A stretch of 64,000 bases of DNA from Octopus sinensis (lineage: Eukaryota), in NCBI RefSeq assembly GCF_006345805.1, contig NC_043011.1:28966464-29030463 (forward strand), given 5' to 3'. This document shows positions 27,756 through 52,111 of the stretch, one piece after another; within the stretch, counting starts at the first letter, position 1; each line of letters opens with the position of its first letter. The translations under genes were made by a program, and so were the position numbers. The notes beneath the pieces were generated by a model that ran no database searches, had not been told where the DNA came from, and worked only from the letters and a program-made list of their open reading frames with translations.

Positions 27756-27769
27756 CCAATTTCATTATA

Positions 27770-29163: not shown

Positions 29164-29351
29164 TTTCAGAATATTCCCAACACAATCTTTTCCATTTTCT
29201 CCATACTGTTCTTTCCATAGAAACTCATCAAGGTACGAGTCCACCATGGTGGAATGTACCCCCATCATCATTTTAAATTTTCTTTTTGCATTCTTCCAGT
29301 AACGTTCCACAGAATTTGTGTGTACACCTGTTAGCGGATCCACAAAATTCC
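29164..29351 (-). pseudogene. Merlin / IS1595(ISXO2)-family DDE transposase C-terminal fragment
   Basis: 'NFVDPLTGVHTNSVERYWKNAKRKFK...DSYLDEFLWKEQYG' matches the characteristic 'NFVDP.TG.HTN.IE..W...K...YLDEF.W' motif. Confidence 0.85.
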
Positions 29352-29531
29352 GGGACCACTCTGCGATACAAGTACCCGTTTCTTATACTCCAATAATGTT
29401 TTACTTCCTTTACATAATTGTTTCTTGAATGTATGTTTATATTTCAATGAAACAAGATATTACTTATACTGGGCATCAAACAACTAGTCATACTACACTG
29501 GTATAAATACAGATATCGTGTGTACATGCTG

Positions 29532-29990
29532 TATTTGCCCCCCCCCCCTCCATTGACAACTGGTGCTGGCTACTTTTCATCTTTGTAAAAAAATAGAAAC
29601 CATTGTGCGTAATTTGGGGGAAGATTTTGCTGTTATATCTAGCATGCCTAACGATCATGTAAGATATTCTTTTGTTGGCTCGTTTTGTGTAGTAAATGTA
29701 TTACAGTAAATACCTTTATCTGTAAACTTTCGAATGAAACTGGAATTGTCACCTTTGTTCCTTTTGCCTTTACTGTTGTATTAAAAAAGGCGATAATTTT
29801 TAAATTTCATAATACTTAAAGAAATTTAAGCATTAAATTAACCACATCATTTAATTAGAAATAATTAGTTGTAGTAGTTGAGCTATAATGTATATGATAA
29901 TATTTAGAGAGAAATTAATATTTCAATGTAGTATTAGATGCGACATCAGTGAACTTACAATGCAAATATTTTATATATGAGATTGGTGAA
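29532..29990 (+). promoter_or_regulatory. Orphan U1 upstream/promoter region with no U1 gene; fused to LINE copy B
   Basis: Aligns continuously with 18150-18604 (e.g. 'atctagcatgcctaacgatcatgtaagat', 'ttacaatgcaaatat', 'gagattggtgaa'); homology stops at the equivalent of -13. Confidence 0.88.
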
Positions 29991-32900
29991 GTCAGAACCT
30001 CAGTGTCGGTTGCTTTATTTTTGTTGCGCGTATATTTCAATTGGTGTCTATTTGTTAGTGTGAGTTCGTCTCTGTGTTTTTTGTGTCATTTGAACTGTTG
30101 TCTTGTGACATACAGTAATTTTCGCCCTAAGGGGCAGAAAATTCCTGCATTTATAATTATTTCTTGTCAGTTGCGACAAGGTTATTTATTTTTTGGATAC
30201 GATGGAGTGTGACCTTGTGTCAAAAAAGGATTTTCCCCGAGATGGGAACAGTTAAAAATATCGGAAACGAAACGGTCAACAAGGACAAACAAAGCTTTTC
30301 AGCTGCAGTAGGTGGCAAAGTTATCGAACTGGAAGTAGTAATGGACAAGCTCTTCCAGTTCAGACAATACATTGTAAAAAAATGGCAAAGAGACTAAGCT
30401 GGTACCGCCCCTGGAAACTGTCCAGGCTATACGAGAGAAAACTGTCGTATACAAGGTATTCAACATCAAGGAGAAGAAAATTGCAGAGGTGAAGAACGAA
30501 GTGGTGGGGCGATGCATGGCTCCCATCTGGAACAAAGTACGCTATGTTAGCCGAGATGTGCGAAGTGCTACAGTTGAAGCGCAATTCGAGTCGGCTAACG
30601 TAGCAAAGGAGATATCCACGAAGACTCTCAAAAATGATGAAATTATGTTGTTACCGACTTATTTAGGCCGGCGAACTGCTAAAATTAGTTGAGGACATAC
30701 CTGCCGGTTATGATGTGATGTGGGTAGCAACAGCAGTCGTGTATGACATGGAAGCTAAGGTATTAATACTAAGCATGAGGATGAAAGAAGAGACGAACTG
30801 GAAGGGTCAGAGTTTGGAGATGGTTGTTCAAGGGGACAACAAAACCCTTGAAAGTTTGCCCGACAGGATCAATGTAGGGGAGGGACACACAATTCGTGTG
30901 TCGGTGGAGGGACGTAGGCCCAGATGCTTCAAGTGTGGGCAGAAAGGCCATGTTCGCTCTACTTGTACCAAAAAAAAAAAACAACAGTTGAAGTCCCCCC
31001 CAAAAAAACTGCTGTGAGGCAGGAAAACGATGAAAACGAAAAGAAAAAACAAATTGAAAAACAGAAGGAGGAGCAAAAAGAAAATGGAAGAAAGAATGAA
31101 GAACAGAAAAAAGAAGAGAAAAAACAAAAGGAAAGCGAACAGGTGGAATTTGTAACGGTGACGTACAAACGTAAAAAAGAAAGCACCCCAGACTCCCCTC
31201 CCCAAACAAAAAGAAAAACTGCAAGCACACATGAACAACAGCAAAAAATTCCCCAACCCCTCCCAGCTAACACTACCTTCGTAGGTCAGCATTTTAATAA
31301 ACCCCATCCCCCTGTGTTAAAAGGTATAAAAAAATCGGAAAAAATTATATCGTTTAATGAGAAGAACAAGAGAGTTTTAAGACTAATCAAGGCTAATAGC
31401 CGCATGAAAATTCTTAAAATAACTGGAGGCGAGCCCGACGCGCGATATGCAAAAGTCGGAGAGGAGGAGTTTAAAGTAAAGCTCCTCCAGGAACATTTGG
31501 TAAACAAAAACATCAGATGTTACCCAGGAGGCAATAGCTGGGAAGTTAATCATCAGCCCGGCAGCCACTCCTAACCAGAGACCAGTGGTAACGCCGGTGA
31601 AAAGCCCAGCAGCCTCGGGGAGTGAGAGGGAAGCTGGCAGACATAAACTGCCATGACCCCTCTCTCAACCATAAATAATTTATTTTCTTTTACTCAATGA
31701 TTAAGTTAGGTTGTTTGAATGTGCGTGGAATGGGGTCGAGATAGAAACAAGCTTGTTTTCTGAACGACCTCATGACACGGAATAGATGTTATTGTAACCG
31801 AGTCCAAGATGAGTGGACCTCAAGCGTTCTTGCCTCTTCTGTGTGGTTACGAGAAATTTATTTCTCCTAGCCGAGGAGGGGGAAGGGGTGTGGCAGTCTT
31901 TATCAGGAAGAGCTTGGACTTACAGATAAGTACCCTCTTTCTGGACCCAAAAGGCAAGCTGGTTGTACTAGATGTGACTCACATGAGTAAACAGTCCTTC
32001 AGGTTGGTAGCTGCCCACGCTCCTGAGAAGTGTAGGCAGTCTGGTTTTTACCGGAACCTGGAGCACTTTCTGGTGACGTCTAAAACGTTAGTTTTGGTAG
32101 GGGACTTCAACACAGTTTTGGTAGGGGACTTCAACACTATCCTCAATGCGCGGGTCGATAGTGTGGGCTCAACTGATAGGAAAGGGAATCCTTGCCTCAA
32201 GGGTCTACTAGAGAGCTATAATCTAGTAGACCATTACTGACTGGATGAGCCGAACGTTCCACAGTGGACATGGAGTAACAACGACGGCTCACACAGATCG
32301 TACCTAGATAGGGTATTCATTAAGGAAAGAGGTAAGAATAGAGTTAGTTGTCCACGGATCACAAACCTGTGACGTGTGAGGTACACACAGATAAATGTCA
32401 TAGATAGGGACTCGGATAGTGGAAAATGAACAAGTCTATTATGACTTGTGAAGCTTTCCGTACCTGGATTACGGAGTTAGTTCAGAGGGCATTATGTGGT
32501 ACCATCATTAACAATAGATGGTGGTACACCTTCAACAGAGCCATTCGTTCAGAGTCCATTAGATTTAGCAAGCAGCTAAGTTTAGATAGGACTAGAATAG
32601 AGGGCGATTTAGTTAAGAACTTAGATGAGACAATGGAATCTGGCTCTACATCTAGAGTGTTGGCGGTGAGAACAGTCTTGTGCCGCCACCTCAACGCCAA
32701 GCATGAAAGCTGCAGAGTCAGAGCCAAGCTACGCGCAGGGAAATGAGAAGGTTGGAGAGGTTGGGAGGCAATCCTAATGAAATTGGATGCGGTAAGTCTG
32801 TTTCTGCCTATGCTGATGACGTCACCTTCATCGTGTCCAACGAAGCACAGCTACCTCGTGTAGAAGGTGCTCTCCGAGGATACGAAGCGGTGACAGGGGC

Positions 32901-34365
32901 AAAAGTTAACAAGGACAAGTCCACCGGTTTGGGCCTTGGAACCTGGAGGAACAAGCCGATATCGTCCAGTGTTGTTGGACACTGGACAGATGGTCCTGTT
33001 AAATTGCTTGGAGTTTGGTTTGGTTCAGATTCCCAGACGGAGAAAAATTGGAGCGAGGTAGTGAACAAGGTAGAAGCATTAGTACGGAAGTGGTCCGGAA
33101 GGCATCTTTCCTTGAAAGGGAGGGCGGAGGCATTACAGGTGTTTATAGCATCCGTCATCACCTACCACCTGACTGTCGTGCCTTGCCCCAATTTGTGGCT
33201 AAGCAAGTTGGAACGACTCCTTTTCTGCTTTTTGTGGAAGGGAGGAAAGCCACTTGTAAGGCGCTCCGTGTGTTGCCAGGAACCGCTAAAGGGTGGGCTA
33301 CGGATGCCTTGGCTAATGATGTGTAGGCATGCGTTGAGGCTGAGACATCTCTGGTGCCACCAGGAGGGTGATAACGTGTGTAGTCCACTGGCAGAGGAAT
33401 TCTTCCCGCGACCGGATGCTTTGGAGAGATTTAAACCCGGTTTCATTAAAAGACGGAACCTGACTTTATGACAGAAGGAGTGCCAACAGGCACTCTGGCT
33501 GATCCACAAGATGGGCAAGGCCGGCAGCGGGAATACCACCTCGGTGTTCTATAAAGGGCTGGTAGAGGCAAAAGATGACGACGTCCTAGGAGGGGCTCTG
33601 GGGTTCGATGAGAATCAACTCTCCAACCTGTTAAGAAGACTTTCAGGCTGGGGTATTTGGATAATTATCAAAAATCCCTGACTTGGCAGTGCTATAGGAA
33701 TGCCTTACCTGTTCATGGTAAGTTATTTAGGTACAGAATGTCAGTGCCACCGCCGTGTCCAAGATGTGGGTTGGACGATGAAACCGTTCAACACGCGTTT
33801 GTACATTGTCAGGAGCTGTCAAGCTTGATAAGTTACGTAGAACACGTGTTGTTGCATCTGGGACGAGTACAGCTGTCAGCTGGTTCTATAATAAAGATGA
33901 TACCGCCAACTGGACTCTAAAAGGAAGGTGAGGCTTGTTTTCACTGTACGGTTGCTGTACTGAAAGAGTGTGTGTGGAGAACCAGAATGGAAGGTTTTGT
34001 GACAGGGTGCTTTGTCTCTGGCCCCGGTCTGTTAAACTACTTCAGATTTCATCTGAAGAGCAAGATGGAGTTGGAGAGGAGGAACCTGCCACAGAAAGAG
34101 TATGTGAAATGTTGGAAGGATGTGATAAGAAAGGTGGGTGTGAGTAACCCAGCTTAATCATCAATGAAAGGAGAAAATAGTTGCCGGGTAAAAGTCTGTA
34201 CTGTTCTATACTTACCTGGCTAATTAAAAAAAAAAATTTAAAGTGTAGTATTATATTATTCTAAATTTTTAAATACCATACGAACTACATAACTTTTTTG
34301 TAATTGTGTTTTGTCCTGTAGTGTCCTATCTTTGTATCGATTTTTATGATCATAATAAAGATTTT
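29991..34365 (+). mobile_element. Tx1-like LINE copy B: 5'UTR, ORF1 (ATG 30202), ORF2 (~31697-34157, most of RT deleted near 32745), 3'UTR ending AATAAAGATTTT
   Basis: ORF1 CCHC knuckle CFKCGQKGHVRSTC; EN motifs VGDFN; RT 'AYADDV'; C-terminal zinc finger CPRCGLDDETVQHAFVHC; several stops. Confidence 0.92.
34208..34220 (+). other. Perfect 13-nt copy of the U1 5' end (ATACTTACCTGGC) in the 3' region of copy B
   Basis: Identical to 14761-14773. Confidence 0.8.
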
Positions 34366-34380
34366 ATACTAACCTGTCAC
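34366..34380 (+). other. Degenerate U1 5'-end remnant between copies B and C (putative TSD)
   Basis: ATACTAACCTGTCAC matches U1 nt 1-15 at 13/15 and is preceded by AAAGATTTT as at 43664-43672. Confidence 0.7.
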
Positions 34381-36982
34381 TTGTCTTGGGAATCCTTTTT
34401 CATCTGCGAATCAAGAAATTGGCTGCCTATTTTTGTTAAGTGAGTTCGTTTTTTGCTCATTGTTGTTTTGTGTTTCTCACGTTAATTTGAACTATTGTCC
34501 GTTGTGTGACAATTTTCGCCCTACAGGGCTGAAAATTCTGTTTATGAACATTTTTATTACCTTTGTGGTAATTTTTGGAAAATTTGTTAAAACTTGTTTC
34601 TTGTCGTAATTTGACAAATGGAATTCGATTTAACGTCGAAAAAAGACTTCCCTGTGATGGGAAAAGGCAAACATAATAAGGATGTCGAGTTTTGAAAACA
34701 GTCTTTTTCGGCCGCAGTGGGCAGAACCGTAACGGAAGTGGAATTCAAAATAGAACAGTTGTTTGAATACCGGAACTTGGTCAAAAAGGAAGGCAACGAA
34801 ATAAAACTTGTACCGCCGCAAGTGATATTACAAGAGATAAAGGCCAAGACAGTTGTGTACAAGGTGTACAGTATCAAGGAGAAAAAAATAAGGTGTTGAA
34901 TAAAATTCGCTACATCAGTCGAGGTGCCACCGTTGAAGCACATTTCGACTTGGCTGATGTGGCAAAGGAGATTTCGTCAATGACTTTAAAAAATGAGGAT
35001 ATTATGTTATTACCCACCTATATGGGCAAAAGAACAGTAAAACTTTATGTGGAAGATATACCTATAGGATACAATGTAATGTGGGCAGCAGCAGTGGTTC
35101 TGCATGACATAGAGCAGAAAGTCTCAATTCTGCAGATGAAAAGGAAAGAGGTAAACTGGAAGGGACAAGCACTCGAGCTCCTCGTTCAAGCCGAGAATAA
35201 TGTACTGGAAAACCTGCCCGATTGGCTATTTATTGATGAGCGACTTTCAATGAGAGTAGCAGTGGATGGGCGGAAACCCAAGTGTTTCAAATGTGGTGAA
35301 AAGGGTCACGTCTGCTCCAACTGCGTAAAAAAAAGAAAATCAGTGAAGCCCCTCCTCAAAGTGCTTCAAATACAGAAAAAGAGGAGGGGAAAAAGGATCC
35401 CAAGACTGCAACAAGGGATAAAACCGGAACAGAAGAAAAGCAAGATAAAACGCAAGAACCAATGAATTTCACACAAGTAACATACAAAAGAAAAAAAGAA
35501 AATACCCTGGACTCCCCACCCCAAACAAAGAAAAAAACAGCAAACACTGCAGAGACACATCCAAAACAAATTCCCCAGTCCTATCCCCAGTTCGCCAAGC
35601 CCCACCCCATAAAACAAGATCCAAAAAATTGTTAAAAAAAGAATGAAAGAATTGTGGCATTCGATGAGAGGAACAATAGAGTGTTCAAACACTTCAAATT
35701 CTCAAAACTTAAGTTATTTAGCAAGTCTGCAGACACCAAGTCAACCACTCGTTTTGCTAAAATAAAGACGAGTGGAAAAAGAAAACTCTTCAAGAACATT
35801 TGAAAAATAATTACATTAGAGATGTAAGTAACGAAATACTGGAGGGCAAACTAACTATAACCCCGGCAACCACACCTACCCAGAGATGTGGCAACGCCGG
35901 TTAAGAGCCCTGCAGTTACGACCATAAGGGAGGAAGAAGAGGAAGCATGCAGACTCAAACTGCCATGCTCCCTGTCCCAATCATAAGTAAAATTTTTTTT
36001 CTCCGTCAATGGTCAAGTTGTGAATGTGCATGGAATGGGGTTGAAATGGAAACAAATTTGTTTCCTGCATGACCTCACGACACGCGGAGTGGATGTGGCT
36101 AAATGAGTCCAAGATGAGCGGGGCCCAAGCGTTCTCGCCTCTTCTGAATGGTTTCGAGAAATTTATTTCTCCTAGCCAAGGAAGAGGAAGGGGTGTGGCA
36201 GTCCTTATCAGGAAGAGCTTGGACTTGCAGGTAAGTACTATCTTTCTGGACTCAGAAGGTAGGCTGGTCGTTCTGGATGTGACACATGTAAGTAACAGTC
36301 CTTCAGGTTGGTGGCTGTCTATGCTCCTAACGAGTGTGGGCAGTTGGGTTTTTTTGGGGACCTGGAGCACTTTTTAGCGACGTCGAAAATGGTAGTTTTG
36401 GTAGGGGACTTTAACACTATCCTCGATGTACGGATCAATAGTGTTGGTTCCACTGATAGGAAGGGGAATCCTAGCCTCAAAGGTCTACTAGAGAGCTTTA
36501 ATCGAGTAGACCATTACTGACTGGATGAGCTGAATGTTCCACAGTGGACGTGGAGTAACAATGACAGTTCAAAAAGATTGTATATAGATAGGGTACTCAT
36601 TAGGAAAAGAGATAAGGATATGTTTAGTTGTCCAGTTTCACATTGTGCCTTCAACGGATCACAAATTTGTGACTTGTGAGGTGCAATTAGATAAGTGTCA
36701 TAGACAGGGACCCTCGAAGGGTAGAGCGGAGGTGGTGCAGGTGTTTATAGCATCTGTAATCACCTACCACCTGTTTGTTGTACCTGCCCCGATTTTTGTC
36801 TAAACAAGCTGGTACGACTCTTCCACTTTTTGTGGAGAGGGGGAAAGCCACTTGTGAGGTGCCCCGTGTGCTGTCAGGAACCACTAAAGGTGGCTTGGGG
36901 ATACCATGGCTAATGATGCACAGACATGCATTGAGGCTGACACATCTCTGGTGCCACCTGGAGGGTGATAAGGTGTGGAGCC
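34381..36982 (+). mobile_element. Tx1-like LINE copy C: 5'UTR, ORF1 (ATG 34618), EN, deletion at ~36715 into the post-RT region, 3'-truncated
   Basis: 'MEFDLTSKKDFPVMG', CFKCGEKGHVCSNC, EN motifs. Confidence 0.9.
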
Positions 36983-38002
36983 AACAAAAGGAAAAAATCC
37001 AACACCCCGGACTCCCCACCCCAAACAAAAAGAAAAATAAATGCAGACGAACAACACAAAAAAATTTTCCAAACCCACCCTGCTGGTACTACGTTTGTAG
37101 GACAGCATTTCATTAAACTCCAACCCCCAACTTTAAAAGGTTTTAAAAAAACAGATAAGTGTATAGCATATAATGCGAAAAATGAGAGAGTGGTGTGGTT
37201 TATAAAAGCAAGATCTCACATCAAATGTTTTAAAACCACAAAAAAAGACCCTGAATGGAAATACGCAAAGGTCGGCGAGGAAGAGAGACTCTTCCAACTG
37301 CATGTGAAGGACAATCTCATCAAAGATGTCACCCAGGAGGTGATGGCTGGGAAAGTGCACATCAGCCCGGCAGCCACTCCATCCCAGAGCCCGGTGGCAA
37401 CGCCGGTGAAATGCCCAGCAACAACGGAGAGTGTGGGGGAGGCAGGCAGACATAAGCTGCCATGCTCCCTCTCACAACCGTAAGTAGAAAACTTTCTTCT
37501 TTCATTGATGATTAAGTTGGGCTGTATAAATATGCGTGGAATGGGGTCGAAATGGAAACAGGCCTGTTTGCTGAACGACCTCACGACACACAGAATAGAT
37601 GTAGCCATTGTCACCGAGGCCAAGATGAGAGGACTACAAGCATTCTCGCCTCTTCTGAATGGTTACGAGAAATTTATTTCTCCTAGCCGAGGAGGAAGTG
37701 CAGGCGTGGCAGTCCTTATCAGGAAGAACTTGGACTTACAGGTAAGTACTGTCTTTCTGGAACCAGAAGGCAGGATGGTTGTACTAGATGTGACTCATAT
37801 GAGTAAACAGTCCTTCAGGTTGGTAGCTGTCCATGCCCCTAAGGAATGTAGGCAGTCTGGTTTTTACCGGGACCTGGAGCACTTTCTATTGGCGTCTAAA
37901 ACGTTAGTTTTGGTAGGGGACATCAATACTATCCTTGATGCACGGGTCGATAGTGTGGGCTCAACTGATAGGAAAGAGAATCCTTGACTCAAGGGTCTAC
38001 TA
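36983..38002 (+). mobile_element. Tx1-like LINE copy D: ORF1 3' half plus EN N-terminus
   Basis: ORFs 36965-37483 and 37505-37987. Confidence 0.9.
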
Positions 38003-41000
38003 AGATAGAACCACCACCAGAAACATTAAATGCTATCCGCGAAAAAATTGTAGTGTACAAAATTTACAATTTAAAGGAAAAAAAAATCAGTGATGTAAAA
38101 TACGAAGTAATCAAAAGGTGCTTGGCACTGATATGGGGAAAAATACATTACGTTAGCTGAGGAGTGAGAAGTGCAACAATTGAAGCTCATTTCAACTCGG
38201 CTAGTGTAGCAAAGGAAGTTTCAACGCAAACGTTGAAAAACGAACTAATTATGCTGCTGCCCACTTACTTGGACCGCAGAACGGTTAAAATAACAGTCGA
38301 AGACATTCCAGTCGGTTTTGACATGATGCGAGTGGCTGTGATTTTCGACGTGGAGCAGAAGATAACGGTATTGAGCATGAAGAAAAAAGAACCGGACAAT
38401 TGGAAGGGACAAATTCTTGAAATGGTCGTCCAAGCGGAAAATTCAACACTTGAAAATTTGCCAGATAGGGTTTTCGTGGGGGAGGGGCACACCATCCGTG
38501 TAGCGGTGGAGGGACGTAGGCCTAGGTGCGTCAAGTGCGGGCAAAAGGGCCACGTTCGCTCTGCCTGTATTAAGAAAAAAACGGGTGACGCCCTTCCTCC
38601 AAGTGCTGTGAAAATCACAGAAGATAAAAAATAAAACTGTAATGACTAAAGAAACCAAAGGAAAGAAACAAAGCGAAAACGAAAAGGAGGAAAATAAAGA
38701 AAAACAAAAAGGAGAGGAAGATAAACAAACAGAATCTGAAGAAATGGAGTATACAACTGTCACAAATAAAAGGAAGAAAACTCATACCCTGGACTCTCCA
38801 CCCTAAACAAAAAAGAAAAATAATACAGATGAACAAAATAAAAAAAAAATTCCCCAATGGCACTACTTTAATTGGCCAGCGATTCACCATACCCCACCCT
38901 CCAACATTCAAAGGTCTTAAAAAAACGGACAGAATAGTTATGTACAATGTGAAAAACAAGAAGGTGATTCATTTAATCAAAGCCCACCTGCGTATAAAAT
39001 CTTTTAAAAGTGCTGACAACGAAACTGATTTTCGTTACGCGAAGATCGGTGAGGAGGAGTGGAGAGAGAAGCTCCTCCAAGACCACATAAAAGAGAACCA
39101 AATAAGAGACGTTACACAGGATGTGATAGCTGGCAAACTAATCATCAACCCGGCAGCCACTCCTACCCAGAGCCCGGTGGCAAGCCCAAGAAAGAGCCCA
39201 GCTGAAGCGGAAAGCGTGAGGGAAGCTGGCAAACAAAAAGTGCCATGCTCCCTCTCACAACCGTAAGTGACTTCTTTTATTTTTTTCTATGATTAAATTG
39301 GGTAGTTTGAATGTGCGTGGAATGGGGTCGAAATGGAAACAGGCTTGTTTGCTGGACGGCCTCATTTCACATAGAAGAGATGTGGCTGTGATCACTGAGT
39401 CCAAGATGAGGGGACCTGAAGCGTTCTCACCCCGCCTCAATGGTTACGAGAAATTTACTTCTACGAGACTGAGGGGAGGTGCAGGCGTGGCAGTCCTGAT
39501 CAAGAAGGGCTTACTGATAAGTACCGTCTTTCTGGACCCAGAAGGTAGACTGGTTGTCCTAGATGTAACACAGGAAAGTAAGCAGTACTTCAGGTTGGTA
39601 GCTGTCTATGCTCCTAACTTGCATGGGCAGTTGGGTTTTTTTCGGAACCTGGAGTACTTTCTGTTGACATCTAAAACGTTAGTTTTGTTAGGGGACTTCA
39701 ACACTATCCTCAGTGCGCGGGGCGATAGTGTAGGCTCCACCCATAGGGAGGGGAATCCTTGCCTCAAGAGTCTACTATACAGCTTTAATCTAGTAGACCG
39801 CTACCGACTGGATGAGCCGAACGTTCCACAGAGGACGTGGAGTAATAACGACGGCTCATGCAGATCGTACATAGATAGAATTTTTGTTAACAAAAGAGAT
39901 AAGAATAGCTTTAGCTGTCCACAATTTTGTATTGTGCCTTACACAGATCACAAACTAGTGACATGTGAGGTACATCTAGATAAGTGTCATAGACAGGGAC
40001 CCGGTTATTAGAAAATGAACAAGTCCATTTTGGCTTGTGAACTTTCCATACCCGGATTAAGGAGATAGTGCAGAGGGCATTGTGGGACCATCATTAATAA
40101 TAGGTGGTGACACGCCCTCAAGAGAGCCATCCGTCTTGAGTTCATTAGATTTAGCAAGCAGCAAAGTTTAGATAGGACTAGAATAGAGGGTGACTTAGTT
40201 AAGAGTCTAGATGAGGCAATGGAATCTGGCTCCACATCCAGAGTGTCGGCAGCGAGAACGGCCTTGTACCGTCACCTCAATGCCAAACACGAAGGGTGCC
40301 GAGTCAGAGCTAAGTTACGTGCTGGGAAACGAGAGGGTATTAACGTAGCCAGATGGACATGTCATGTGGAGAGTCAGAAGACCTGTATTAAGTCTTTAAA
40401 TGACAAGCAGGGACGCAAGATTTATGGACAGGGGGAGATGCATTTTGCTTGGGTGTTTGGGGAGAGCGGTCCGCTTCAGCGCGGGGAGCCCTTAAGGGAC
40501 TTCCTAACTGGCGGACCTCGACTCTCGGCATTAGAGGCTGGATGCTGTGAGGGCCCAATCACTCCCGCAGAGGTGCTGGTCGAATGCACAGGAGAAAAGT
40601 CTCCGGGACTGGATGGTCTGCCATACGAGTTTTATCGTTCAATGCCGGATTTGTTTGGAGAGGTTATGTCCAGCGTCTATGCAAACTGACAGCAGAACAG
40701 GAGAATTCCCAGTACTGTGAGCCGGGGAGTTGTGATGCTGGTCCAGAAAGACCCAAGCAAGGGGGATAATATCAGTAACTACAGGCCCATAACTCTACTT
40801 AACGTAGAGTTAAAGATTTGGTCAAGGTGTTAGCAAAAAGGTTGACGGTTGTCGTGGAGAAGCTTGTCGGGAAGGCACAGACTCGTGCAATCCCAGGCAG
40901 GTCGATCTAGGACAAACTTCATCTTCTCCACTACACCTTAGAGAGGGCAAAGGAGGAGGGGCATTGATCCACTTGGACCAGAGTAAAGCATTCGATAGGA

Positions 41001-41388
41001 TAGACCACCGGTACCTGGGGTCGGTCATCGATGTGGCTGGGCTAGGCCCTGGTTTTCGCGGGTGGATCGCCGCAATGTATAGTGGCATCAAGTCCACCGT
41101 CCAGATAAACGGTAACCTAACGGAGCTGTTTTCGATTAAGCAGTCTGTTTGTCAAGGGTGCCCCTTGTCTCTGATTCTGTATGTTTTGACCCTGGAGCCA
41201 TCGCTGAGGAGGCTGGAGAAGTTAGGCGGCAACCCTAATGAGATTGGATGTTGTAGGTTCACTACTGCTTATGCGGACGACGTCACTCATCGTGTCTAAA
41301 GAAGCACAACTACCTCATGTAGAAGATGCTCTCCAAAGATATGAAGCGGTAGCAGGGGCAAAAGTTAACAAGGACAAGTCCATCGGTT
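38003..41388 (+). mobile_element. Tx1-like LINE copy E: 5'-truncated ORF1, EN, linker, RT through YADD
   Basis: 'NYRPITLLN', 'LDQSKAFDRIDH', 'QGCPLS', 'AYADDVT'; multiple stops and frameshifts. Confidence 0.92.
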
Positions 41389-43672
41389 ATTTGTGAAAAA
41401 TTTCTTTTTTCTTGTCATTTGTGACAAGTTCCTTGTTTTTATAATGGAACTTGAATTAATGTCAAAAACAGATTTTCCCGAGATGGGAGAAGGTAAAAAA
41501 TGGCTACACAGGCGAAACAAAGTTTTTCTAACACCTTAGGCGGCAGTAGAACTGGAAGTGGCAATGGAAAAGCTCTTCCAGTTCAGAAAATTAATTCAAA
41601 AAACCAGCAAGGAAACGCGATTGATACCACCCCCTGAAACCATGCAAGCAATCTGCAAGAAGAAGGTGATCTACAAAGTGTACAACATAAAAGAGAAAAA
41701 AATTGCAGACGTAAAAAATGAAATAGTAGAACGTTGTATGGCGCCAATTTGGAATAAGGTTCGCTACGTTAGCCGAGGAGTGAGAAGCACTACGATAGAA
41801 GCACATTTCGAGTTGGCTAATGTAGTGAAAGAAATTTCAACACAAACATTGAAAAGTGAACACATCCTGCTGCTGCCCACTTACTTAGGTCGCAGAACAG
41901 CAAAAGTTACAATAGAGGACATACCCAGTGGTTATGAAGTAATGTGGGCAGTAACAGCAGTCATTTTCGACGTAGAGGAAAAATTGACTATTTTGAGCAT
42001 GAGGAAGAAAGAGGTGAGAAATTGGAAAGGCCAACAACTTGAGATGATTATTCAAGCGGATAATTCTACGCTGGAAAGTTTGCCAGACAGGGTCTTCGTG
42101 GGGGAGGGGCATACTATACATGTATCGGTAGAGGGACGTAGACCCAGATGTTTCAAGTATGGACAGAAGGGTCATGATTGCTCAGAATGCACAAAGAAAA
42201 AAACGGTTAATGCCCCTCCTCAAAACACAGAACAACACAGAAACAACAAAAGAAAGCACGGGAAAAAAAAACAAACTGAAATTCAAAAGAAGGAAAAGAA
42301 AAAGAATGAAAAACAGGAAGAAATGGAATACACAACTGTGACAAACAAAAGGGAAAAATCCAACACCCCAGACTCCCCACCCCAAACAAAAAAAATAAAT
42401 GCAGATGAACAACACAAAAAAACTCTCCAATCCCACCCCGCTGGTACTACATTTGTAGGACAGCATTTCAATAAACCCTACCCCCAACTTTAAAAGGTTT
42501 TAAGAAAACCGATAAATGTATAGCATATAATGCGAAAAATGAGAGAGTGGTGTAGTTTATAAAAGCAAGATCTCACATCAAATGTTTTAAAACTACAGAG
42601 AAAGACCCTGAATGGAAATACGCAAAGGTCGGCGAGGAGGAGTGGAAGAAGAGAGTCTTCCAACAGCATGTGAAGGACAATCTCATCAAAGATGTCACCC
42701 AGGAGGTGATAGCTAGGAAAGTGCAAATCAGCCCGGCAGCCACTCCATCCCAGAGCCCGGTGGCAACGCCAGTGAAATGCCCAGCAACTACGGAGAGTGT
42801 GGGGGAGGCAGGCAAACATAAGCTACCATGCTCCCTCTCACAACCGTAAGTAGAAAACTTTCTTCTTTCATTGATGATTAAGTTGGGCTGTCTAAATGTG
42901 CATGGAATGGGGTCGAAATGGAAACAGGCCTGTTTGCTGAACAACCTCACGACACACAGAATAGATGTAGCCATTGTCACCGAGTCCAAGATGAGAGGAC
43001 CCCAAACATTCTCGTCTCTTCTGAATGGTTACGAGAAATTTATTTCTCCTAGCCGAGGAGGAGGTGCAGGCGTGACAGTCCTTATCAGGAAGGACTTGGA
43101 CTTACAGGTAAGTACTGTCTTCCTGGACCCAGAAGGTAGGCGGGTTGTCCTGGATGTAACTCGTGTGAGTAAGCAGTTCTTGAGGTTGGTAGCTGTTTAT
43201 GCTCCTAATGAGTGTAGGCAGACTGGTTTTTATCGGAACCTGGAGCACTGTCTCGATGCACAGGTCGATAGTGTTGGCCCGACTGATAGAAAAGGAATCC
43301 TTGCCTCAAGGCTCTACCAGCGAGCTTTACTCTAGTAGATCGTTTTCGACTGGATGAGCCAAACGTTGCGCAGTGGACGTGGAGTAACAATGACAGCTCA
43401 CGTAGATCGTATATAGATAGGGTATTTGTTAAGGAACGAGATAGGAATAGCATTAGCTGTCCACAATATTCTGTCGTGCTTTACACGGATCACAAACTTG
43501 TGACATGTGAGGTACATGTAGATAAATGCCATAGACATGGTCCAGGGTACTGGAAAATGAACAAGTCTATTTTGACCTGTGAAGCTTTTTGTATCCGGAT
43601 TAAGGAATTAGTCCAGAGGGCATTATGTGGCACCATCGTTAATAATAGATGGTAGCTCGCCCTAAAGATTTT
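41389..43672 (+). mobile_element. Tx1-like LINE copy F: partial 5'UTR, ORF1 (ATG 41444), EN; deletion to the terminal AAAGATTTT
   Basis: ORFs 41558-42493 and 42871-43335. The last 9 nt match the 3' end of copy B. Confidence 0.9.
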
Positions 43673-43689
43673 ATACTTACCTGGCACAG
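43673..43689 (+). other. Perfect 17-nt U1 5' end (ATACTTACCTGGCACAG) between copies F and G (putative TSD/target)
   Basis: Identical to nt 1-17 of all three U1 genes in the window. Confidence 0.9.
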
Positions 43690-46600
43690 ATTTTTCCTCG
43701 GATTACGTCGGATTATTTTACGCTGTAAGCTGTTATGTTAGTTCGTTCTGTTCTGGATTTACACGTACAATTTTTGGATTATTAACTTGTGGAACAAAGT
43801 AATTTACACCCTTCGGGGTAGAAAATTTCTTTTTATATATGAACTATTAACTCAGTGTGGAATTAACTTTTATCTTGTCACTTGGATTTCAATATGGATC
43901 TTGACTTAATGTCAAATTCTGATTTTCCCGAGATGGGAGAAGTTATAAATAATGGAAAGCAAAAGGATACAAAGGAGAAACAAAGTTTTTCGGAAGCCGT
44001 TGGAGGCAATGTTATAGAACTGGAAGTAGCAATGGGGGATCTCTTTCAGTTCAGAAAGTTAATACAAAGGTATGGAGAAGAAACAAGATTAATACCGCCC
44101 CCTGAAACTTTACAAGCAATCCGTGAGAAGACGGTAATTTACAAAGTATATAACATTAAGGAAAAAAAATAGCGGATGTAAAAAATGAATTGGTAGAACG
44201 GTGTATGGCGCCAATTTGGATCAAGGTTCGCTATGTTGGCCGAGGAGTGAGAAGTGCTACGATTGAAGTGCATTTCGAGTTGGCTAGCATAGCGAAGGAA
44301 ATTTCAACTCAAACGTTGAAAAGTGTAGACATCCTGTTGCTGCCCACGTACTTAGGCCGCAGAACAGCTAAGGTAACAATAGAGGATATACCAACAGGTT
44401 ACGATGTAATGTGGGCAGCAACAACATTCATATTCGACGTAGAGGAGAAATTGAACATTTTAAACATGAGGATGAAAGAGGCAAAATTTTGGAAAGGCCA
44501 GCAGCTTGAAATGATCGTTCAAGCGGACAATGCAACGCTGGAGAGCTTGCCAGACAGGGTCTTCGTGGGGGATGGACACTATGCGGGTATCAGTGGAGGG
44601 ACGTAGGCCCAGATGTTTCAAATGTGGGCAGAAGGGTCACGTTCGTCCAGAGTGCAAAAAGAAAAAACCCGTTAATGCCCCCCTTCAAATGGCTGTGGAG
44701 AACAAAGCAGACATCACAGCAACAACAAAAGAGAACACCCGGAAAAAGCAAAATGAAAGTCAAAAGGAGGAAAAGAAAATGAATGGAAAACAAAACGAAA
44801 ACGAATAGGAGGTGGAAAATAATTTATCAAATAGAAAAGAACTGGAAGTAATGGAATATACGACTGTAACCAACAAAAGGAAGAAATCCAATACCCCGGA
44901 CTCCCCACCCCAAACAAAAAGAGAAACAAACGCAGAAGAACAAAACAAAAAAATTATCCAATCCCACCCCGCTGGCACTACTTTTGTAGGCCAGCATTTC
45001 ATTGAACCCCAGCCCCCAACTTTAAAAGGATTCAAAAAAACAGATAGGTGCATTGCTTATAATGCGAAAAACGAAAGAGTAGTCTGGTTCATAAAGGCGA
45101 AACCAAACATAAAATGTTTCAAATCATTGGAAAAAGACCCGGATTGGAAGTATGCGAAGGTTGGAGAGGAGGAGTGGAAGGAGAGACCCTTCCAACTACA
45201 TGTGAAGGACAACCTGATTAAAGATGTCACACAAGAGGTGATAGCTGGAAAATTGAATATTAGCCCGGCAGCCACTCCATCCCAGAGCCCGGTGGCAACG
45301 CTGGTTAAATGCCCAGCAACAACGGAGAGTGTGGGGGAGGCAGGCAGACATAAGCTGCCATGCTCCCTCTCACAACCGTAAGTAGAAAACTTTCTTCTTT
45401 CATTGATGATTAAGTTGGGCTGTATAAATGTGCGTGGAATGGGGTCGAAATGGAAACAGGCTTGTTTGCTGAACGACCTCATGACACACAGAATAGATGT
45501 AGCCATTGTCACCAAGTCCAAGATGAGAGGAACCCAAGCGTTCTCGCATCTTCTCTGGTTACAAGAAATTTATTTCTCCTAGCCGAGGAGGAAGTGCAGG
45601 CGTGGCAGTCCTTATCAGGAAGGACTTGGACTTACAGGTAAGTACTGACTTTCTGGACCTAGAAGGTAGGCTGGTTGTCCTCGATGTAACTCACGTGAGT
45701 AAGCAGTCCTTCAGGTTGGTAGCTGTCTATGCTCCTAATGAGTGTAGGCAGACTGGTTTTTATCGGAACTTGGAGTACTTTCTAGTGACGTCTAAAACGG
45801 TAGTATTGGTAGGGGATTTCAACACTATCATCGATGCGCGGATCGATAGTGTGGGCTCGTCTGATAGAAGAGGGAATCCTTGCCTCAAGGGTCTACTGAC
45901 GAGCTTTAATCTAGTAGATCGGTTTCAAATGGATGAGCCGAGCATTCCACGGTGGACGTGGAGTAACAATGACGGCTCACGCAGATCGTATATAGATAGG
46001 GTATTTGTTAAAGAACGAGATAGGAATAACATTAGCTGTCCACAATTTTGTATTGTGCCTTACACGGATCACAAACTAGTGACGTGTGAGGTACATATAG
46101 ATAAATGCCATAGACAGGGACCCGGGTACTGGAAAATGAACAAGTCTATTTTGGCTTGTGAAGCTTTCTGTAACCAGATTATGGAATTTGTCCAGAGTGC
46201 ATTATGTGGAACCATCATTAATAATAGATGGTGGATCGCCCTCAAAAGAGCCATCCGTTTGGAGTCCATTAGATTTAGCAAGCAGCTAAGTTTAGATAGG
46301 ACTAGAATAGAGGGCGAATTAGTTAAGAACTTAGACGAGGCAATGGAATCTGGCTGTACATCTGGATTGTTGGCAGCGAGAACGGTCTTGTACCATCACC
46401 TCAGCACCAAGCATGAGAGGTGTAGAGTCAGAGCTAAGCTACATGCAGGGAAACGAGAAGGTATTAACGTTGCCGGATGGGCCCGTCGTGAGGAGAGTCA
46501 GAAGGGCAAAAAGTCCTCTATTAAGTCTTTAACTGACGAACAGGGTCACAAAATCTATGGACAGGAGGAGATGCAGAAGGTCTTTCACCAGCATTTCGCC

Positions 46601-47400
46601 CGGTTGTTTGGGGATGGCAGGTCTTAAAGGACTTCCTAGCCAGTGGGCCTCGATTCTCGGCATGTGAGGTGGAATGTTGTGAAGGATCGATCACTCCCGT
46701 GGAGGTAAGAGAGGTTTTGGCCAAATGCGCCGGGGCTGGATGGTCTGCCCTATGAGTTCTATTGTTGTATGCTGCACTGGTTCAGGGATATACTGGCAGG
46801 CGTCTATGCAAGATGGCAACAGAATGGGAGGATCCCCAGTTCTGTGAGCCGGGGAGTTGTGATGCTGGTCCAGAAAGACCCGAGCAAGGGGTATAGTATT
46901 AGTAATTATAGGCCCATAACTCTACTTAATGTTAAAGATTTTGGCCAAGGTGTTAGTAAAAAGGCTGACAGCTGTCGTGGAGAAACTTGTCAGGAAGGCA
47001 CAGACATGTGCAATCCTAGGTTGGTCGATCGAGGATAATCTTCACCTTCTCCGCTACACTATAGACAGGTCTTAAAGGTCTGTTTGCGATAAGTTATCTA
47101 GGCACGGAATGTCAGTGCCACCAACGTGTCCAAGATGTGGGTTGGACGATGAAACCGTTCAACACGCTTTTGTACATTGTCAGGAGCTGTCAAGCTTGAT
47201 AAGTTACGTAGAACACATGTTGTCGCATCTGGGACGAGTACAGCTGTCAGCTGGATCTATGATAAAGATGATACCGCCAACTGGACTCGCAAAGGAAGGT
47301 GAGGCTTGTTTTCACTGTACGGTGGCAGTACTGAAAGAGTGTGTGTAGAGAACCAGAATGGAAGGTTTGGTGACAGGATCCTTTGTCTCTGGCTCAGTCT
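43690..47400 (+). mobile_element. Tx1-like LINE copy G: full 5'UTR, ORF1 (ATG 43894), EN, linker, RT start, deletion near 47075 to the zinc finger, 3'-truncated
   Basis: ORFs 43882-45381 (frameshifted), 45602-46627 and 47109-47348. Confidence 0.92.
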
Positions 47401-49592: not shown

Positions 49593-49596
49593 TTTA

Positions 49597-50598
49597 CAAC
49601 CCATTTGGAACAAAATAAAATATGTTGGACATGTGATAGAAAGTGCTACAGTGGAGGCACAATTCACTGACGAAAGTACAGCTAAAGAACTGTCTACACT
49701 GACACTGAAAAGTGAAGAGATAATTCTCCTGCCAACTTATCTAGGCAGGAGAACAGTGAAAATTAAAGTGGAGGAAATTCCAGCTGGTTTGGGTGTATTG
49801 GAAATTGCAGCAGCCATATTATACGACATGGAAGACTAAATGTTCATTCTTCAAATACAGAAAAAGGCGGCCGAAAATTGGATAGGTCAGTCACACGAAA
49901 TGGTGGTCCAAGCCAGACCAAAAATTCTCGAAGGGCTTCCTGATAGTGTTCATTGGGGAGGGGCTGAGCGTGAAAGGGAGTGCTGAGGGACGTAAGCCAC
50001 ACTGTTTTAAGTGTGGAAAAAAAAAAACCACAGAAGAAATAGAATTTACAATAGTAAAATTTCAAAAAAGGAAGAAGGCTTCAGCCCCAGATTCCCCTCC
50101 CCATACACAAAAAACATCAAAAGCTACTATAGGCATGCAAGAAAAAACTCCCCCACAACATCCGCCTGTTAAAACCCATTTCCAAACCCCACCCCAAGAC
50201 ACTGAACAAAACTGTGTCATTTAATGATAACAATGCAGTTTTATCCAGAGTCATTCGAGCACATTATAGAACTCAAGTTTACAAAGCAAATAAAGACATG
50301 CCACCTTACATCTGGATAGCTAGGATGGAAGTAGGATTGTTCAACAAATTAAAAGCCAAATACGCAGATGACATAAAGGACGTGAGCCAAGAAATGGCCA
50401 GCAGGAGTTTTATAGCAAGTCCAGCAGCTACACCACAGAAGAAAAAGGATGGGGAGGAAGCTGAGTTCATGCAGCCCCTCCCCAAACATAAAATGTAAGT
50501 ACCATTTTCTGTGGAAATTAAGCTAGGATGCATAAATGCGTGTGGCCTAGGGTCAAAATGGAAACAACCATCTCTCCTGAACAAACTTAGGTCACTAG
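49597..50598 (+). mobile_element. Tx1-like LINE copy H (divergent): ORF1 3' two-thirds plus EN start
   Basis: 'LLPTYLGRRTVKIKVEEIP', 'RKPHCFKCG', 'SPAATP', then 'IKLGCINACGLGSKWKQ'. Confidence 0.85.
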
Positions 50599-52111
50599 AA
50601 AAAATATACGGGAAAAGATGGAAGGACATGGAAAGGAGGTTGAGTTTGAATGACTCGGCTTAATTCTGTACATGGTGAATTCATACGGTGTAGCCGGTGG
50701 ACTTCCCAGCCAAAGTGTTAAATTCTAAATTCTAAATAATATATCTGTTATAAACCCAAACTTGAATATCAAATTTTAAAAGGTTTTAATTGACTAAAAA
50801 TACAGCAATATACAATACAAAGATTGCCAAAATTGTAAGCAAAACCAAACTTCAACGCAATAACATTTTTATGCAGCTAGTTGCTACATTCTTGACTGAC
50901 TAAAATCAATGCTGAACATGTCATCTGCAAACAGAACAGAAGTCTGCACAGTCGCACTGCAGGCATAGCACAGCAATCGAGACAATTAAAATCACGTGAT
51001 CAAAATTAAAATCACAACATTTTTCCCCACTAAAGAGAAAAAAGAACAATTAACCAACAAAATGCAAAATACAAACATAACCATGAGTCAATCACAACGA
51101 CGTAATAGTAAGGCTTTTCATAAGCGTAACACATCATCTTTATATAAAAAACTGAAGTTGTGTGTGTGAGAGTCTGTCTCCTCCGATTTAGATTCCTAAC
51201 TACTCCCACATTTTGCGGTGCAGTTTAACCAAAAGCGGGTATCTTATAGTCGTGATTCATATCGAGCCCTTCTGGGTATTAGCGCGCGTCTATTATGAGT
51301 CTACGATGATAAAAAAATTTACCATCATTTTTTCGCATTTTTTGCTCGGTTTATATAAGGGAAGTAACTCTCTAAAAATGCTTATATAGTTATTTCCCTT
51401 AGTCTTTTTTACATTTTTAATGCATTTTTGTTGATCAGCTGATCATTCATGCATAATTTTGCACGACTGCACGCTGACGTCATCTTGGAATATCGATTTT
51501 TCTCTTACATGCATTCGCATGCAATTTAAACTCAAATTCGCTGACGCACTGCTTAAATGTTTTCATACTGTTGTGTTTATTAAATGTGTGAAATTGAAGC
51601 GTTCCCTGAAAAAAATCAACATATTTTGATGGATAAAAATAAATTAGTAAAATTTAGGAAGAAAACCTGCATCTTTTTCAACTTATGACGATAAAAAAGT
51701 CTTAAAAATTGCAAAAAGATTGAATTATTCTTTTCATCGAAAATGTTGAAAGGCTCAATCATTCGTAAGTTATTATATTTTAACTTATTCTTGACTCGAC
51801 TGAATAAAAAACCAGGTATTTTTTATAAATGAATCAGGAGCTTAGGAAATGCCCCTGCTTAATTCAAATCAAAAATATAGAAATTTTGTTATAATGATTT
51901 GACTGAAAATTACAAGAATTGGTGTCTGACTGACTTATTAAAACCAATGTATTTTATTTTAAGATTTTATTGTTCAATTTCTACTATTCGTTACTGTTAT
52001 GCCGAAAAGAAAAAGAACAGTTTTGACATTAACAAAGATGCAGCTCCAAAATAAAAGGCAGCTTAGAGCTGAATCTTCCCTTCAAAGACAGTCACAGATT
52101 GCTCTGCTGAA

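What the first reader, a model, noticed from the sequence alone, without database searches (positions are those of the whole stretch)
43664..43689. Junction signature AAAGATTTT|ATACTTACCTGGCACAG defines the target site and a poly(A)-less 3' end
Seen: the F/G junction (43664-43689) and the B/C junction (34357-34380) share the same 9-nt element terminus. In copy B it overlaps an AATAAA. It abuts U1 nt 1 exactly, with no poly(A) tail, and the U1 match stops after nt 17 where the next 5'UTR begins. Inference: a ~17-bp TSD from nicks at U1 +1 and +17. Alternatively, nt 1-17 are copied as part of a U1-promoter-initiated element transcript (5' transduction). Either way the 5'-splice-site-pairing end of U1 is the recognised sequence.
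Basis: partly seen in the sequence, partly recalled or inferred. Interest (0 to 1): 0.8.

Follow-up and report, generated by a model that had tools for sequence, protein, structure and literature searches.

The report
LINE retrotransposon array in a U1 gene
At least six independently inserted copies of an octopus LINE-type retrotransposon are stacked directly behind a U1 snRNA promoter, with the first 13-17 bases of U1 between them; this is best read as the element's target-site duplication, making it a probable U1-directed relative of the known snRNA-gene-targeting LINEs.

Summary
U1 nt 1-17 occurs four times in the window: three start intact U1 genes. The fourth (43673-43689) sits between the element terminus TAAAGATTTT and the 5'UTR of copy G. 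The same terminus plus a 2-mismatch U1(1-15) lies at 34354-34380, and a third spacer, TTCT+U1(1-13), lies at 34204-34220. The array (29991-47393) starts at position -13 of a U1-type promoter.

The element has ORF1 with a CCHC knuckle and an ORF2 with APE endonuclease, RT and zf-RVT. Its closest solved relative is human L1 ORF2p.

Copies differ with dN/dS 0.2-0.44, against about 1 in shifted frames, so they are separate insertions and not local duplications.

A near-intact O. sinensis relative has the same termini and a perfect 18-bp TSD. Two diverged O. bimaculoides relatives lie in tandem, separated by a 19-nt copy of their 5' flank. A 145-bp 5'-truncated fragment in the window carries U1 pieces on both sides.

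The TSD reading is therefore favoured over 5' transduction. U1-specific recognition is only partly supported: there is one locus, and the relatives use a non-U1 repeat. No U1-targeting non-LTR element turned up in the literature I could search.

The parts
14761..14924 (+). Intact U1 snRNA gene (U1a), unoccupied
   Evidence: Rfam RF00003, 132.3 bits, model 1-166
18617..18780 (+). Intact U1 snRNA gene (U1b), unoccupied; reference for the promoter and nt 1-17
   Evidence: Rfam RF00003, 133.4 bits; sequence
21521..21684 (-). Intact U1 snRNA gene (U1c), inverted partner of U1b
   Evidence: Rfam RF00003, 133.4 bits; inverted duplication 18136-20079 / 22167-20206, 93%
29449..29990 (+). U1-type promoter copy that heads the array; homology to the U1b/U1c promoters ends at -13
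   Evidence: 80-83% identity to 18153-18604 and 21698-22256; alignment A7
29991..32752 (+). Copy B1 (5'UTR, ORF1, ORF2 to about aa 353). It abuts the promoter. U1 nt 1-12 and about 12 nt upstream appear deleted; a possible U1 14-17 remnant 'TCAG' is inference only
32756..34203 (+). Copy B2 (RT from motif region, zf-RVT, stop at 34155-34157, first ~46 nt of the 3'UTR). A different lineage from B1; 90% nt identity to the O. sinensis copy
34204..34220 (+). Spacer 1: TTCT + U1 nt 1-13 (exact)
   Evidence: 16/17 to TTTT+U1(1-13), 0 of 500 shuffles reach it
34221..34365 (+). Fragment X: last 145 nt of an element 3'UTR, a 5'-truncated copy ending GATCATAATAAAGATTTT
   Evidence: Homologous to O. sinensis 3'UTR L002 ~15160-15269 and to O. 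bimaculoides
34366..34380 (+). Spacer 2: degenerate U1 nt 1-15 (ATACTAACCTGTCAC, 2 mismatches)
34381..36999 (+). Copy C (5'UTR, ORF1, ORF2 to aa 241, then an RT fragment at 36785-36999); the oldest-looking copy
36980..38002 (+). Copy D (ORF1 aa 337-506, ORF2 aa 1-165); both ends truncated, no spacer
38003..41388 (+). Copy E (ORF1 aa 59 to RT aa ~254), joined directly to the last ~55 nt of F's 5'UTR
41389..43672 (+). Copy F (5'UTR end, ORF1, ORF2 to aa ~281), then TTTT; internal deletion with TAAAGA microhomology to the true 3' terminus
43673..43689 (+). Spacer 3: exact U1 nt 1-17 (the finding)
43690..47393 (+). Copy G (5'UTR starting ATTTTTCCTCGG, ORF1, ORF2 with an RT deletion, zf-RVT). Homology breaks at 47393; its 3' end is not in the window
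27769..29166 (+). Copy A, an older ORF2 fragment of the same family upstream of the array promoter
10892..13160 (-). Old reverse-oriented copy (5'UTR + ORF1 part) near U1a. Its 5' junction begins ATACT... but is not convincingly U1
49594..50600 (+). Copy H, a diverged ORF1 / ORF2-start fragment downstream of G, inside Helitron-like sequence

Best explanation
The window holds a graveyard array of an APE-type non-LTR retrotransposon of the L1/Tx1 group, from an Octopus-lineage genome. The element has been inserted repeatedly, in U1 orientation, at the very 5' end of one U1 snRNA gene.

Shown: the anatomy, the shared termini, the independence of the copies, and 18-19-bp TSDs in relatives.

Inferred mechanism: the endonuclease nicks the bottom strand at U1 -1/+1, or 4 nt upstream once a T run is present. 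Reverse transcription starts at the RNA end ...AAUAAAGA(U)n without a poly(A) tail. The top strand is cut after U1 +17. Fill-in then duplicates U1(1-17) on both sides of the element. Each insertion therefore gives promoter-U1(1-17)-element-U1(1-17..), which regenerates the target. Later insertions land in the spacers and build a head-to-tail array, and the first copy comes under the U1 promoter. Microhomology-associated deletions later removed most spacers and copy ends.

The shared CATnnnTACCTGG between U1 -1..+12 and the O. sinensis TSD suggests that this motif is part of what the endonuclease or the priming step recognises.
For: 1. Three spacers carry identical U1 starts: U1 1-13, 1-15 (2 mismatches) and 1-17.
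2. The array begins at -13 of a U1-type promoter, inside a cluster of three intact U1 genes.
3. The O. sinensis copy L002 9747-15272 is 80-91% identical in nucleotides and has a near-intact ORF1 and ORF2. It starts ..ATTTTTCCTCGG, ends ..GATCATAATAAAGA, and is flanked by a perfect 18-bp TSD, TTTCATCGCTACCTGGTG.
4. The O. bimaculoides locus L003 has two copies in tandem with dS 1.23 and dN/dS 0.23. The 19-mer TTTTTCAAACAGCTGGTCG lies both 5' of copy 1 and between the two copies.
5. Array copies differ with dN/dS 0.20-0.44 and dS 0.16-1.4. Shifted-frame controls give 0.85-1.6, and third codon positions differ about twice as often. The copies are therefore separate retrotransposition events.
6. 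The 5'-truncated fragment X is flanked by U1 pieces on both sides.
7. Domains: Exo_endo_phos, RVT_1 and zf-RVT. The best solved relative is human L1 ORF2p, E=8e-42 for the RT part.
Against: - The predicted terminal structure, element 3' end followed by a full U1 gene, is not visible. G is interrupted at 47393, and no extra U1 body is found even at E<=5.
- There is only one U1 locus. The three intact U1 genes in the window are unoccupied.
- The relatives in O. sinensis and O. bimaculoides sit at the same position of a partly homologous non-U1 repeat, and O. sinensis/B2 are 90% identical in nucleotides, so U1 specificity is not a fixed property of the family.
- The TTTT before U1 nt 1 does not match the AAAC/AAGC found upstream of real U1 genes, so the exact nick position and the origin of the T run are unresolved.
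- The promoter/B1 junction lacks a recognisable U1(1-12).
Confidence: 0.55

Rival explanations
1. One founder insertion happened to land in the U1 5' end, perhaps through a weak preference for ..A[C/G]CTGG. The array then grew because occupied sites attract further insertions: either the TSD plus an element end is recognised, or read-through RNA pairs with its own flank. U1(1-17) is still a TSD, but U1 as such is not the recognised target.
For: Widely diverged lineages share one site both in the window and in L003. Near-identical elements (B2 and the O. sinensis copy, 90% nt) sit at different sites. The three junctions share only TTT-N7-A-N-CTG(G/T). The other three U1 genes in the window are empty.
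Against: Site-specific elements with few targets also pile up at single sites. The O. sinensis TSD resembles U1 -1..+12 (CATnnnTACCTGG). L002 and L003 hit the same position of a partly homologous repeat, which argues for sequence-specific targeting in this family. Other family fragments (copies A, old and H) cluster around the U1 genes.
Confidence: 0.25
2. 5' transduction. Masters driven by a U1 promoter produce RNA that starts at U1 +1, so U1(1-17) is a leader carried by full-length copies, and no 17-bp TSD is made.
For: The array's first copy really does sit behind a U1 promoter. Co-transcription with the target is known for R2 (discussed in PMC4494074).
Against: The near-intact O. sinensis and O. 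bimaculoides relatives have no U1 leader; they carry their own flank repeated instead. The 18-mer on both sides of L002 cannot arise by transduction. The 5'-truncated fragment X has U1(1-13) on its 5' side.
Confidence: 0.1
3. Template switch of the reverse transcriptase onto U1 snRNA at the end of cDNA synthesis adds a U1 'head', as proposed for the crocodilian SINEU and Tx1-Mar families.
For: Some crocodilian Tx1-Mar families carry U1-derived heads and target a Mariner (PMC4494074). The octopus relatives also target a repeat.
Against: All three spacers begin at U1 nt 1 and none extends past nt 17 (13, 15 and 17 nt), whereas reported extension ends vary by up to 22 nt. The array is physically attached to a U1 promoter. 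Relatives lack any head. A U1 piece precedes a 5'-truncated fragment.
Confidence: 0.05
4. The repeated junctions are copies of one junction, produced by local tandem duplication or unequal crossing-over of a single insertion.
For: The array is heavily rearranged, and several junctions are deletion joints.
Against: Between-copy divergence is strongly frame-dependent: dN/dS 0.2-0.44 in frame against about 1 in shifted frames. The copies therefore diverged as active, coding lineages before insertion.
Confidence: 0.03

Closest known systems
Keno (Tx1-clade LINEs specific for U2 snRNA genes; Kojima & Fujiwara 2004, as summarised in PMC4494074 and PMC4640811)
   Same: An APE-type LINE that inserts in a Pol II snRNA gene in a fixed orientation and position, with a precise poly(A)-less 3' junction.
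   Different: The target here is U1, not U2. The site is the first 17 nt, so the promoter and transcription start are captured. RT-tree membership in Tx1/Keno could not be tested here.
Tx1-Mar families and SINEU of crocodilians (Kojima 2015, PMC4494074)
   Same: Tx1-type LINEs that insert at fixed positions of another repeat, as the O. sinensis and O. bimaculoides relatives do. Some of them carry U1-derived sequence at the 5' end.
   Different: Their U1 heads are about 50 nt and travel with dispersed copies, and were attributed to template switching. Here the U1 piece is 13-17 nt, behaves as a TSD, and the array sits in a real U1 locus.
Utopia (RLE-type, U2 gene-specific; PMC4640811)
   Same: An snRNA-gene target, occasional tandem insertions, 20-bp TSDs in reptile families, and off-target insertions at sites resembling the target.
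   Different: Utopia has a restriction-like endonuclease, belongs to the NeSL group and targets U2.
Dada-U1 (DNA transposons specific for U1 genes; PMC3706591, PMC8869645)
   Same: The same target gene family (U1).
   Different: Dada-U1 is a DDE DNA transposon with 6-7-bp TSDs and a different insertion mechanism.
Tx1L of Xenopus laevis (from my own knowledge; the paper PMC85248 was not available)
   Different: Its target is the Tx1D DNA transposon.

Membership tests
APE-type non-LTR retrotransposon, L1/Tx1 group | ORF2 with an N-terminal apurinic-like endonuclease followed by a reverse transcriptase | tested here: met
   PF03372 (E=2.6e-10 and 1.5e-7) and PF00078 hits on window ORFs. Collinear ORF2 of 491+663 aa in L002.
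APE-type non-LTR retrotransposon, L1/Tx1 group | C-terminal zinc-binding domain after the RT, and ORF1 with a CCHC knuckle | tested here: met
   PF13966 zf-RVT, E=1.8e-9. CFKCGQKGHVRS.C is seen in the ORF1 translations.
APE-type non-LTR retrotransposon, L1/Tx1 group | Closer to L1-type ORF2p than to other solved retroelement proteins | tested here: met
   Human LINE-1 ORF2p scores E=8e-42 (RT) and 7e-12 (EN+linker). R2 proteins score 2e-25 or weaker.
APE-type non-LTR retrotransposon, L1/Tx1 group | Target-site duplication from staggered nicks (TPRT) | tested here: met
   Perfect 18-bp TSD around L002 9747-15272. A 19-nt repeat is present in L003.
Tx1 clade | RT domain groups with Tx1L/Keno in a phylogeny | not testable with these tools
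   No Repbase or Tx1 reference sequences could be fetched. Protein hits carried no clade names.
Tx1 clade | Sequence-specific insertion with a defined, poly(A)-less 3' end | tested here: met
   The same 3' terminus, TGATCATAATAAA[G/A]A, is found at three loci in three genomes. L002 and L003 lie at the same position of a partly homologous repeat.
snRNA-gene-specific LINE (Keno-like, but for U1) | Element flanked 5' by the target gene's upstream part | tested here: met
   A U1-type promoter abuts copy B1, and U1(1-17) precedes copy G.
snRNA-gene-specific LINE (Keno-like, but for U1) | Element flanked 3' by the rest of the target gene | tested here: inconclusive
   Only U1(1-13/15/17) follows the 3' ends. 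The array's last copy is interrupted, and no further U1 body is found.
snRNA-gene-specific LINE (Keno-like, but for U1) | A sizeable share of genomic copies lie in the target (more than 20% of flanks, the criterion used in PMC4494074) | not testable with these tools
   The source genome cannot be searched. Three relatives elsewhere (L001-L003) are not at U1.
U1-headed Tx1-Mar / SINEU type | U1-derived head carried at the 5' end of dispersed copies whatever the flank | tested here: not met
   The L002 and L003 full-length copies have no U1 sequence at their 5' ends.

The most novel reading that the evidence does not exclude
Target choice in this family may be carried partly by the RNA rather than fixed in the protein. 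Transcripts would take along a copy of the TSD, as a U1(1-17) leader from the U1 promoter and/or as 3' read-through into the next spacer. That sequence would pair with the nicked target, so a lineage re-homes to whatever 'address' its master occupies.

This would explain why near-identical elements sit at different targets while very diverged ones share a target. It would also offer a TSD/co-transcription origin for the U1 heads of crocodilian Tx1-Mar and SINEU, in place of template switching.
Probability: 0.12. Interest if true: 0.8.

Novelty: new member of a known kind. Interest (0 to 1): 0.5.

Why it matters
snRNA-gene-targeting transposons are rare. The reviews I could read list Keno and Utopia for U2, and the DNA transposons Dada-U1 and Dada-U6 (PMC4640811). 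A Tx1 phylogeny figure also lists U5 as a target (PMC4494074). I found no non-LTR element reported for U1.

An element that duplicates the first 17 nt of U1 has three consequences:
- It regenerates its own target, which explains the tandem arrays.
- It places itself behind a strong Pol II snRNA promoter with the U1 start site intact.
- It separates the regenerated U1 body from that promoter.

It also gives a concrete, testable route by which Tx1-type LINEs and their SINEs could acquire U1-derived 5' heads. Finally, it offers a compact endonuclease whose nick positions on a universally conserved 17-mer can be mapped.

Tried and rejected
- **In-situ duplication of one junction.** Rejected by dN/dS with shifted-frame controls.
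- **The 145-bp piece 34221-34365 as unrelated sequence.** Rejected. It has no other copy in the window but is homologous to the 3'UTR end of the O. sinensis and O. bimaculoides elements.
- **An RNA 'guide' in the UTRs matching each locus's TSD.** Only the window's B2 gives a significant match, and that is better read as a third spacer. The O. sinensis and O. bimaculoides UTRs give p=0.17-0.93.
- **The host repeat of L002/L003 as a tRNA, SINE or snRNA.** No ARAGORN or Rfam hit.
- **More copies from public data.** L001 (O. bimaculoides), L004 (Argonauta hians) and L005 (3-kb contig) gave no usable junctions. Two metagenome scans, one for the 3' junction and one for the 5'UTR hairpin, found nothing. 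The window's own ORFs are not in the protein collection, so the source species is only placed as Octopus-like.
- **Partial U1 bodies after array members.** None, even at E<=5; the other weak Rfam hits are microsatellite noise.
- **The old reverse copy's 5' junction (about 13160-13195, minus strand).** It starts ATACT.. but cannot be aligned convincingly to U1.
- **A tool artefact.** The file L002.fa also holds L003, so an apparent 'second copy in L002' is really the L003 tandem pair.
- **Christensen et al. 2000 on the Tx1L endonuclease.** The paper could not be read.
Full report
**1. What is at the coordinates**

43664-43689 reads AAAGATTTT|ATACTTACCTGGCACAG and is followed by ATTTTTCCTCGG. 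34357-34380 reads AAAGATTTT|ATACTAACCTGTCAC and is preceded by AATAAA.

Rfam finds three complete U1 snRNA genes at 14761-14924(+), 18617-18780(+) and 21521-21684(-), scoring 132-133 bits. All three begin with that 17-mer. The 17-mer has four matches at up to 2 mismatches in the window against 0.01 expected. The fourth copy is the finding, and it is not followed by the rest of U1. AAAGATTTTATAC has three matches against 0.22 expected.

**2. The element**

The region 29991-47393 is a head-to-tail series of degenerate copies of one retroelement, all on the + strand (self-BLAST; map). I call the copies B1, B2, X, C, D, E, F and G. Further fragments lie at 27769-29166 (A), 10892-13160 on the minus strand ('old'), and 49594-50600 (H).

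- ORF1 carries a CCHC knuckle.
- ORF2 has Exo_endo_phos, RVT_1 and zf-RVT domains.
- The closest solved protein is human LINE-1 ORF2p, with E=8e-42 for the RT part and 7e-12 for the EN part. R2 proteins are weaker.

It is therefore an APE-type LINE of the L1/Tx1 group. Tx1-clade membership proper could not be tested because no reference sequences were available.

The best protein relatives are from Octopus: 52-69% identity to O. bimaculoides and O. sinensis gene models. The window is therefore from an Octopus-like genome.

**3. The array sits in a U1 gene**

29449-29990 is 80-83% identical to the promoters of U1b and U1c. The three-way alignment holds up to position -13 (GAGATTgGTGAA). It then runs into the B1 5'UTR instead of into U1.

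About 24 nt, from -12 to +12, seem to be missing. A remnant of U1 14-17 ('TCAG') before CCTCAG is possible but is only inference.

**4. Relatives give the termini and the TSD**

*O. sinensis.* The gene model P0005 led to L002. L002 9747-15272 is a 5.5-kb copy that is 80-91% identical in nucleotides to the window copies. It has a 506-aa ORF1 and an ORF2 broken by a single frameshift.
- It begins TTTTTTGA-ATTTTTCCTCGG.
- It ends GATCATAATAAAGA-AAA.
- It is flanked by a perfect 18-bp direct repeat, TTTCATCGCTACCTGGTG, with unrelated sequence beyond it.

This shows that the 145-bp piece 34221-34365 in the window is the 3'UTR end of the element, that ..AATAAAGA(+T/A run) is the true poly(A)-less terminus, and that ATTTTTCCTCGG is the true 5' start.

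*O. bimaculoides.* L003 holds two copies in tandem. The 19-mer TTTTTCAAACAGCTGGTCG lies both 5' of copy 1 and between the 3' end of copy 1 (..GATCATAATAAAAA) and the 5'UTR of copy 2. The two copies differ by dS 1.23 with dN/dS 0.23.

The L002 and L003 upstream flanks are partly homologous, so the same position of a related repeat is hit in both species. That repeat is not a U1, tRNA or Rfam family.

**5. The copies are independent insertions**

I used the O. sinensis proteins as a coordinate frame. Pairwise dN/dS among B1, C, D, E, F and G is 0.20-0.44, with dS between 0.16 and 1.4. When the same aligned codons are shifted by one or two bases, the ratio becomes 0.85-1.6. Third codon positions differ about twice as often as first and second positions.

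The copies therefore diverged while still coding, as distinct active lineages. They are not local duplicates. At least six separate insertions hit this one U1 unit.

**6. A third spacer and a TSD-type test inside the window**

34204-34220 is TTCT+ATACTTACCTGGC, which matches TTTT+U1(1-13) at 16 of 17 positions. None of 500 shuffles reaches that score.

The local order is therefore:

B2 (3'UTR cut short) - [TTCT U1 1-13] - X (145-nt 3' fragment) - [TTTT U1 1-15*] - C

It cannot be produced by a 5'-transduced leader. The 18-mer on both sides of L002 likewise cannot arise by transduction.

**7. Corrections to the finding**

At F/G, copy F is not complete. Its ORF2 reads in frame ...ctc gcc cta aag a (L-A-L-K-R; compare G at 46240-46255) and then TTTT. 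The 'terminus' there is therefore ORF2 sequence that shares TAAAGA with the real terminus. This is a microhomology joint of an internal deletion, or possibly internal initiation.

B2 ends similarly at ..actgTTCT, where the O. sinensis UTR has ..actgTTTA.

The other joints (C/D, D/E, E/F, B1/B2) are a 3'-truncated copy joined to a 5'-truncated copy with no spacer. The array has lost most of its original junctions.

**8. Mechanism**

The shown parts are the anatomy, the termini, the independence of the copies, and the TSDs in relatives.

The inferred steps are:
- a bottom-strand nick at U1 -1/+1;
- priming on an RNA that ends AAUAAAGA(U)n;
- a top-strand nick after +17;
- fill-in that duplicates U1(1-17).

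This regenerates the target, allows re-insertion, and puts the first copy behind the U1 promoter.

The three junctions align as TGATCATAATAAA[G/A](A)n | TTT-N7-A-N-CTG(G/T). The O. sinensis TSD shares CATnnnTACCTGG with U1 -1..+12. This suggests a recognition core and a possible route for switching between the repeat site and U1.

Unresolved: real U1 genes have AAAC or AAGC, not TTTT, before +1. The T run is therefore either part of the element RNA's end or part of a 21-bp duplicated unit within the array.

**9. What is not shown**

- The array's downstream end is not in the window. G breaks at 47393, and no further U1 body is detectable.
- Only one U1 locus is seen, and three U1 genes in the window are empty.
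- B2 is 90% identical in nucleotides to the O. sinensis copy that sits at a non-U1 site.

A founder insertion followed by homing to the occupied site therefore remains a serious rival. I give it 0.25.

**10. Comparison with what is known**

Reviews list Keno and Utopia (U2) and Dada-U1 and Dada-U6 as the snRNA-gene-targeting transposons (PMC4640811). The Tx1 phylogeny legend adds U5, 5S rRNA, satellites and transposons as Tx1 targets (PMC4494074). Three literature searches found no U1-targeting non-LTR element, and a 2022 paper still cites only Dada for U1. Repbase itself could not be checked.

Crocodilian Tx1-Mar families target a Mariner, and some carry U1-derived heads that were attributed to template switching. 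The octopus family shows repeat-targeted members and a U1-gene array side by side. This makes a TSD/co-transcription origin of such heads worth testing.

**11. Verdict**

The feature is real. U1-specific recognition is plausible but unproven. I classify it as a new member (new target) of the known kind 'site-specific APE-type LINE in snRNA genes'. Interest is moderate.

Noticed in passing
window 18136-22167: U1b and U1c form a ~4-kb inverted duplication (arms 18136-20079 and 22167-20206, 93% identical), so the two U1 genes face each other with their promoters on the outside.
   Followed up: partly
window 30112-30148, 34511-34547, 43806-43842; L002 9876-9912; L003 9899-9935 and 15540-15576: A conserved hairpin in the element 5'UTR (AATTTTCGCCC-loop-GGGnAGAAAATT) is kept in all six copies compared, with 3 pairs showing compensatory changes. 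It could be an RNA signal or part of an internal promoter.
   Followed up: partly
window 48723-63000: Helitron-like sequence: Helitron_like_N at 52900-54153 and PIF1 helicase at 61901-62746. It includes an RT/integrase fragment of an LTR-type element at 55617-56636 and a 1.7-kb inverted repeat (54160-55837 against 60742-59109, 95%).
   Followed up: no
window 11904-12702 and 51137-51380; L002 9491-9660 and 15447-15560: A hairpin-forming MITE-like repeat is tandemly duplicated inside the old reverse LINE copy. Part of it (window 11969-12034) is 79-82% similar to part of the repeat that flanks the O. sinensis insertion on both sides.
   Followed up: partly
window 22297-23997: Fragments of a different LINE: an ORF1-like 199-aa ORF on the + strand and an RT C-terminal-like 259-aa ORF (MLYGSETW...) on the - strand. 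Neither has a Pfam hit at the thresholds used.
   Followed up: no
L002 9707-9746 + 15291-15400 (reconstructed empty site): The O. sinensis target 18-mer lies inside a ~110-nt inverted repeat (TATTTGCAAAGGAGCC ... GGCCTCCCTTTGCAAATA) of an unclassified repeat, next to a mariner-type transposase reading frame.
   Followed up: partly
window 34226-34236; L002 ~15040-15150; L003 15090-15250: The middle of the element 3'UTR is hypervariable between copies: an A11 run in the window, a duplicated ~25-nt unit in O. sinensis, and a (TG/TA)n microsatellite in O. bimaculoides. The last ~110 nt are conserved.
   Followed up: no
window 500-680, 5370-5470, 6500-6930, 8410-8500, 17560-17770, 19900-20390: Dozens of sub-threshold Rfam 'miRNA' hits (mir-297, mir-466, mir-3149 and others) fall on low-complexity or microsatellite DNA and appear on both strands; they are almost certainly artefacts.
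   Followed up: no
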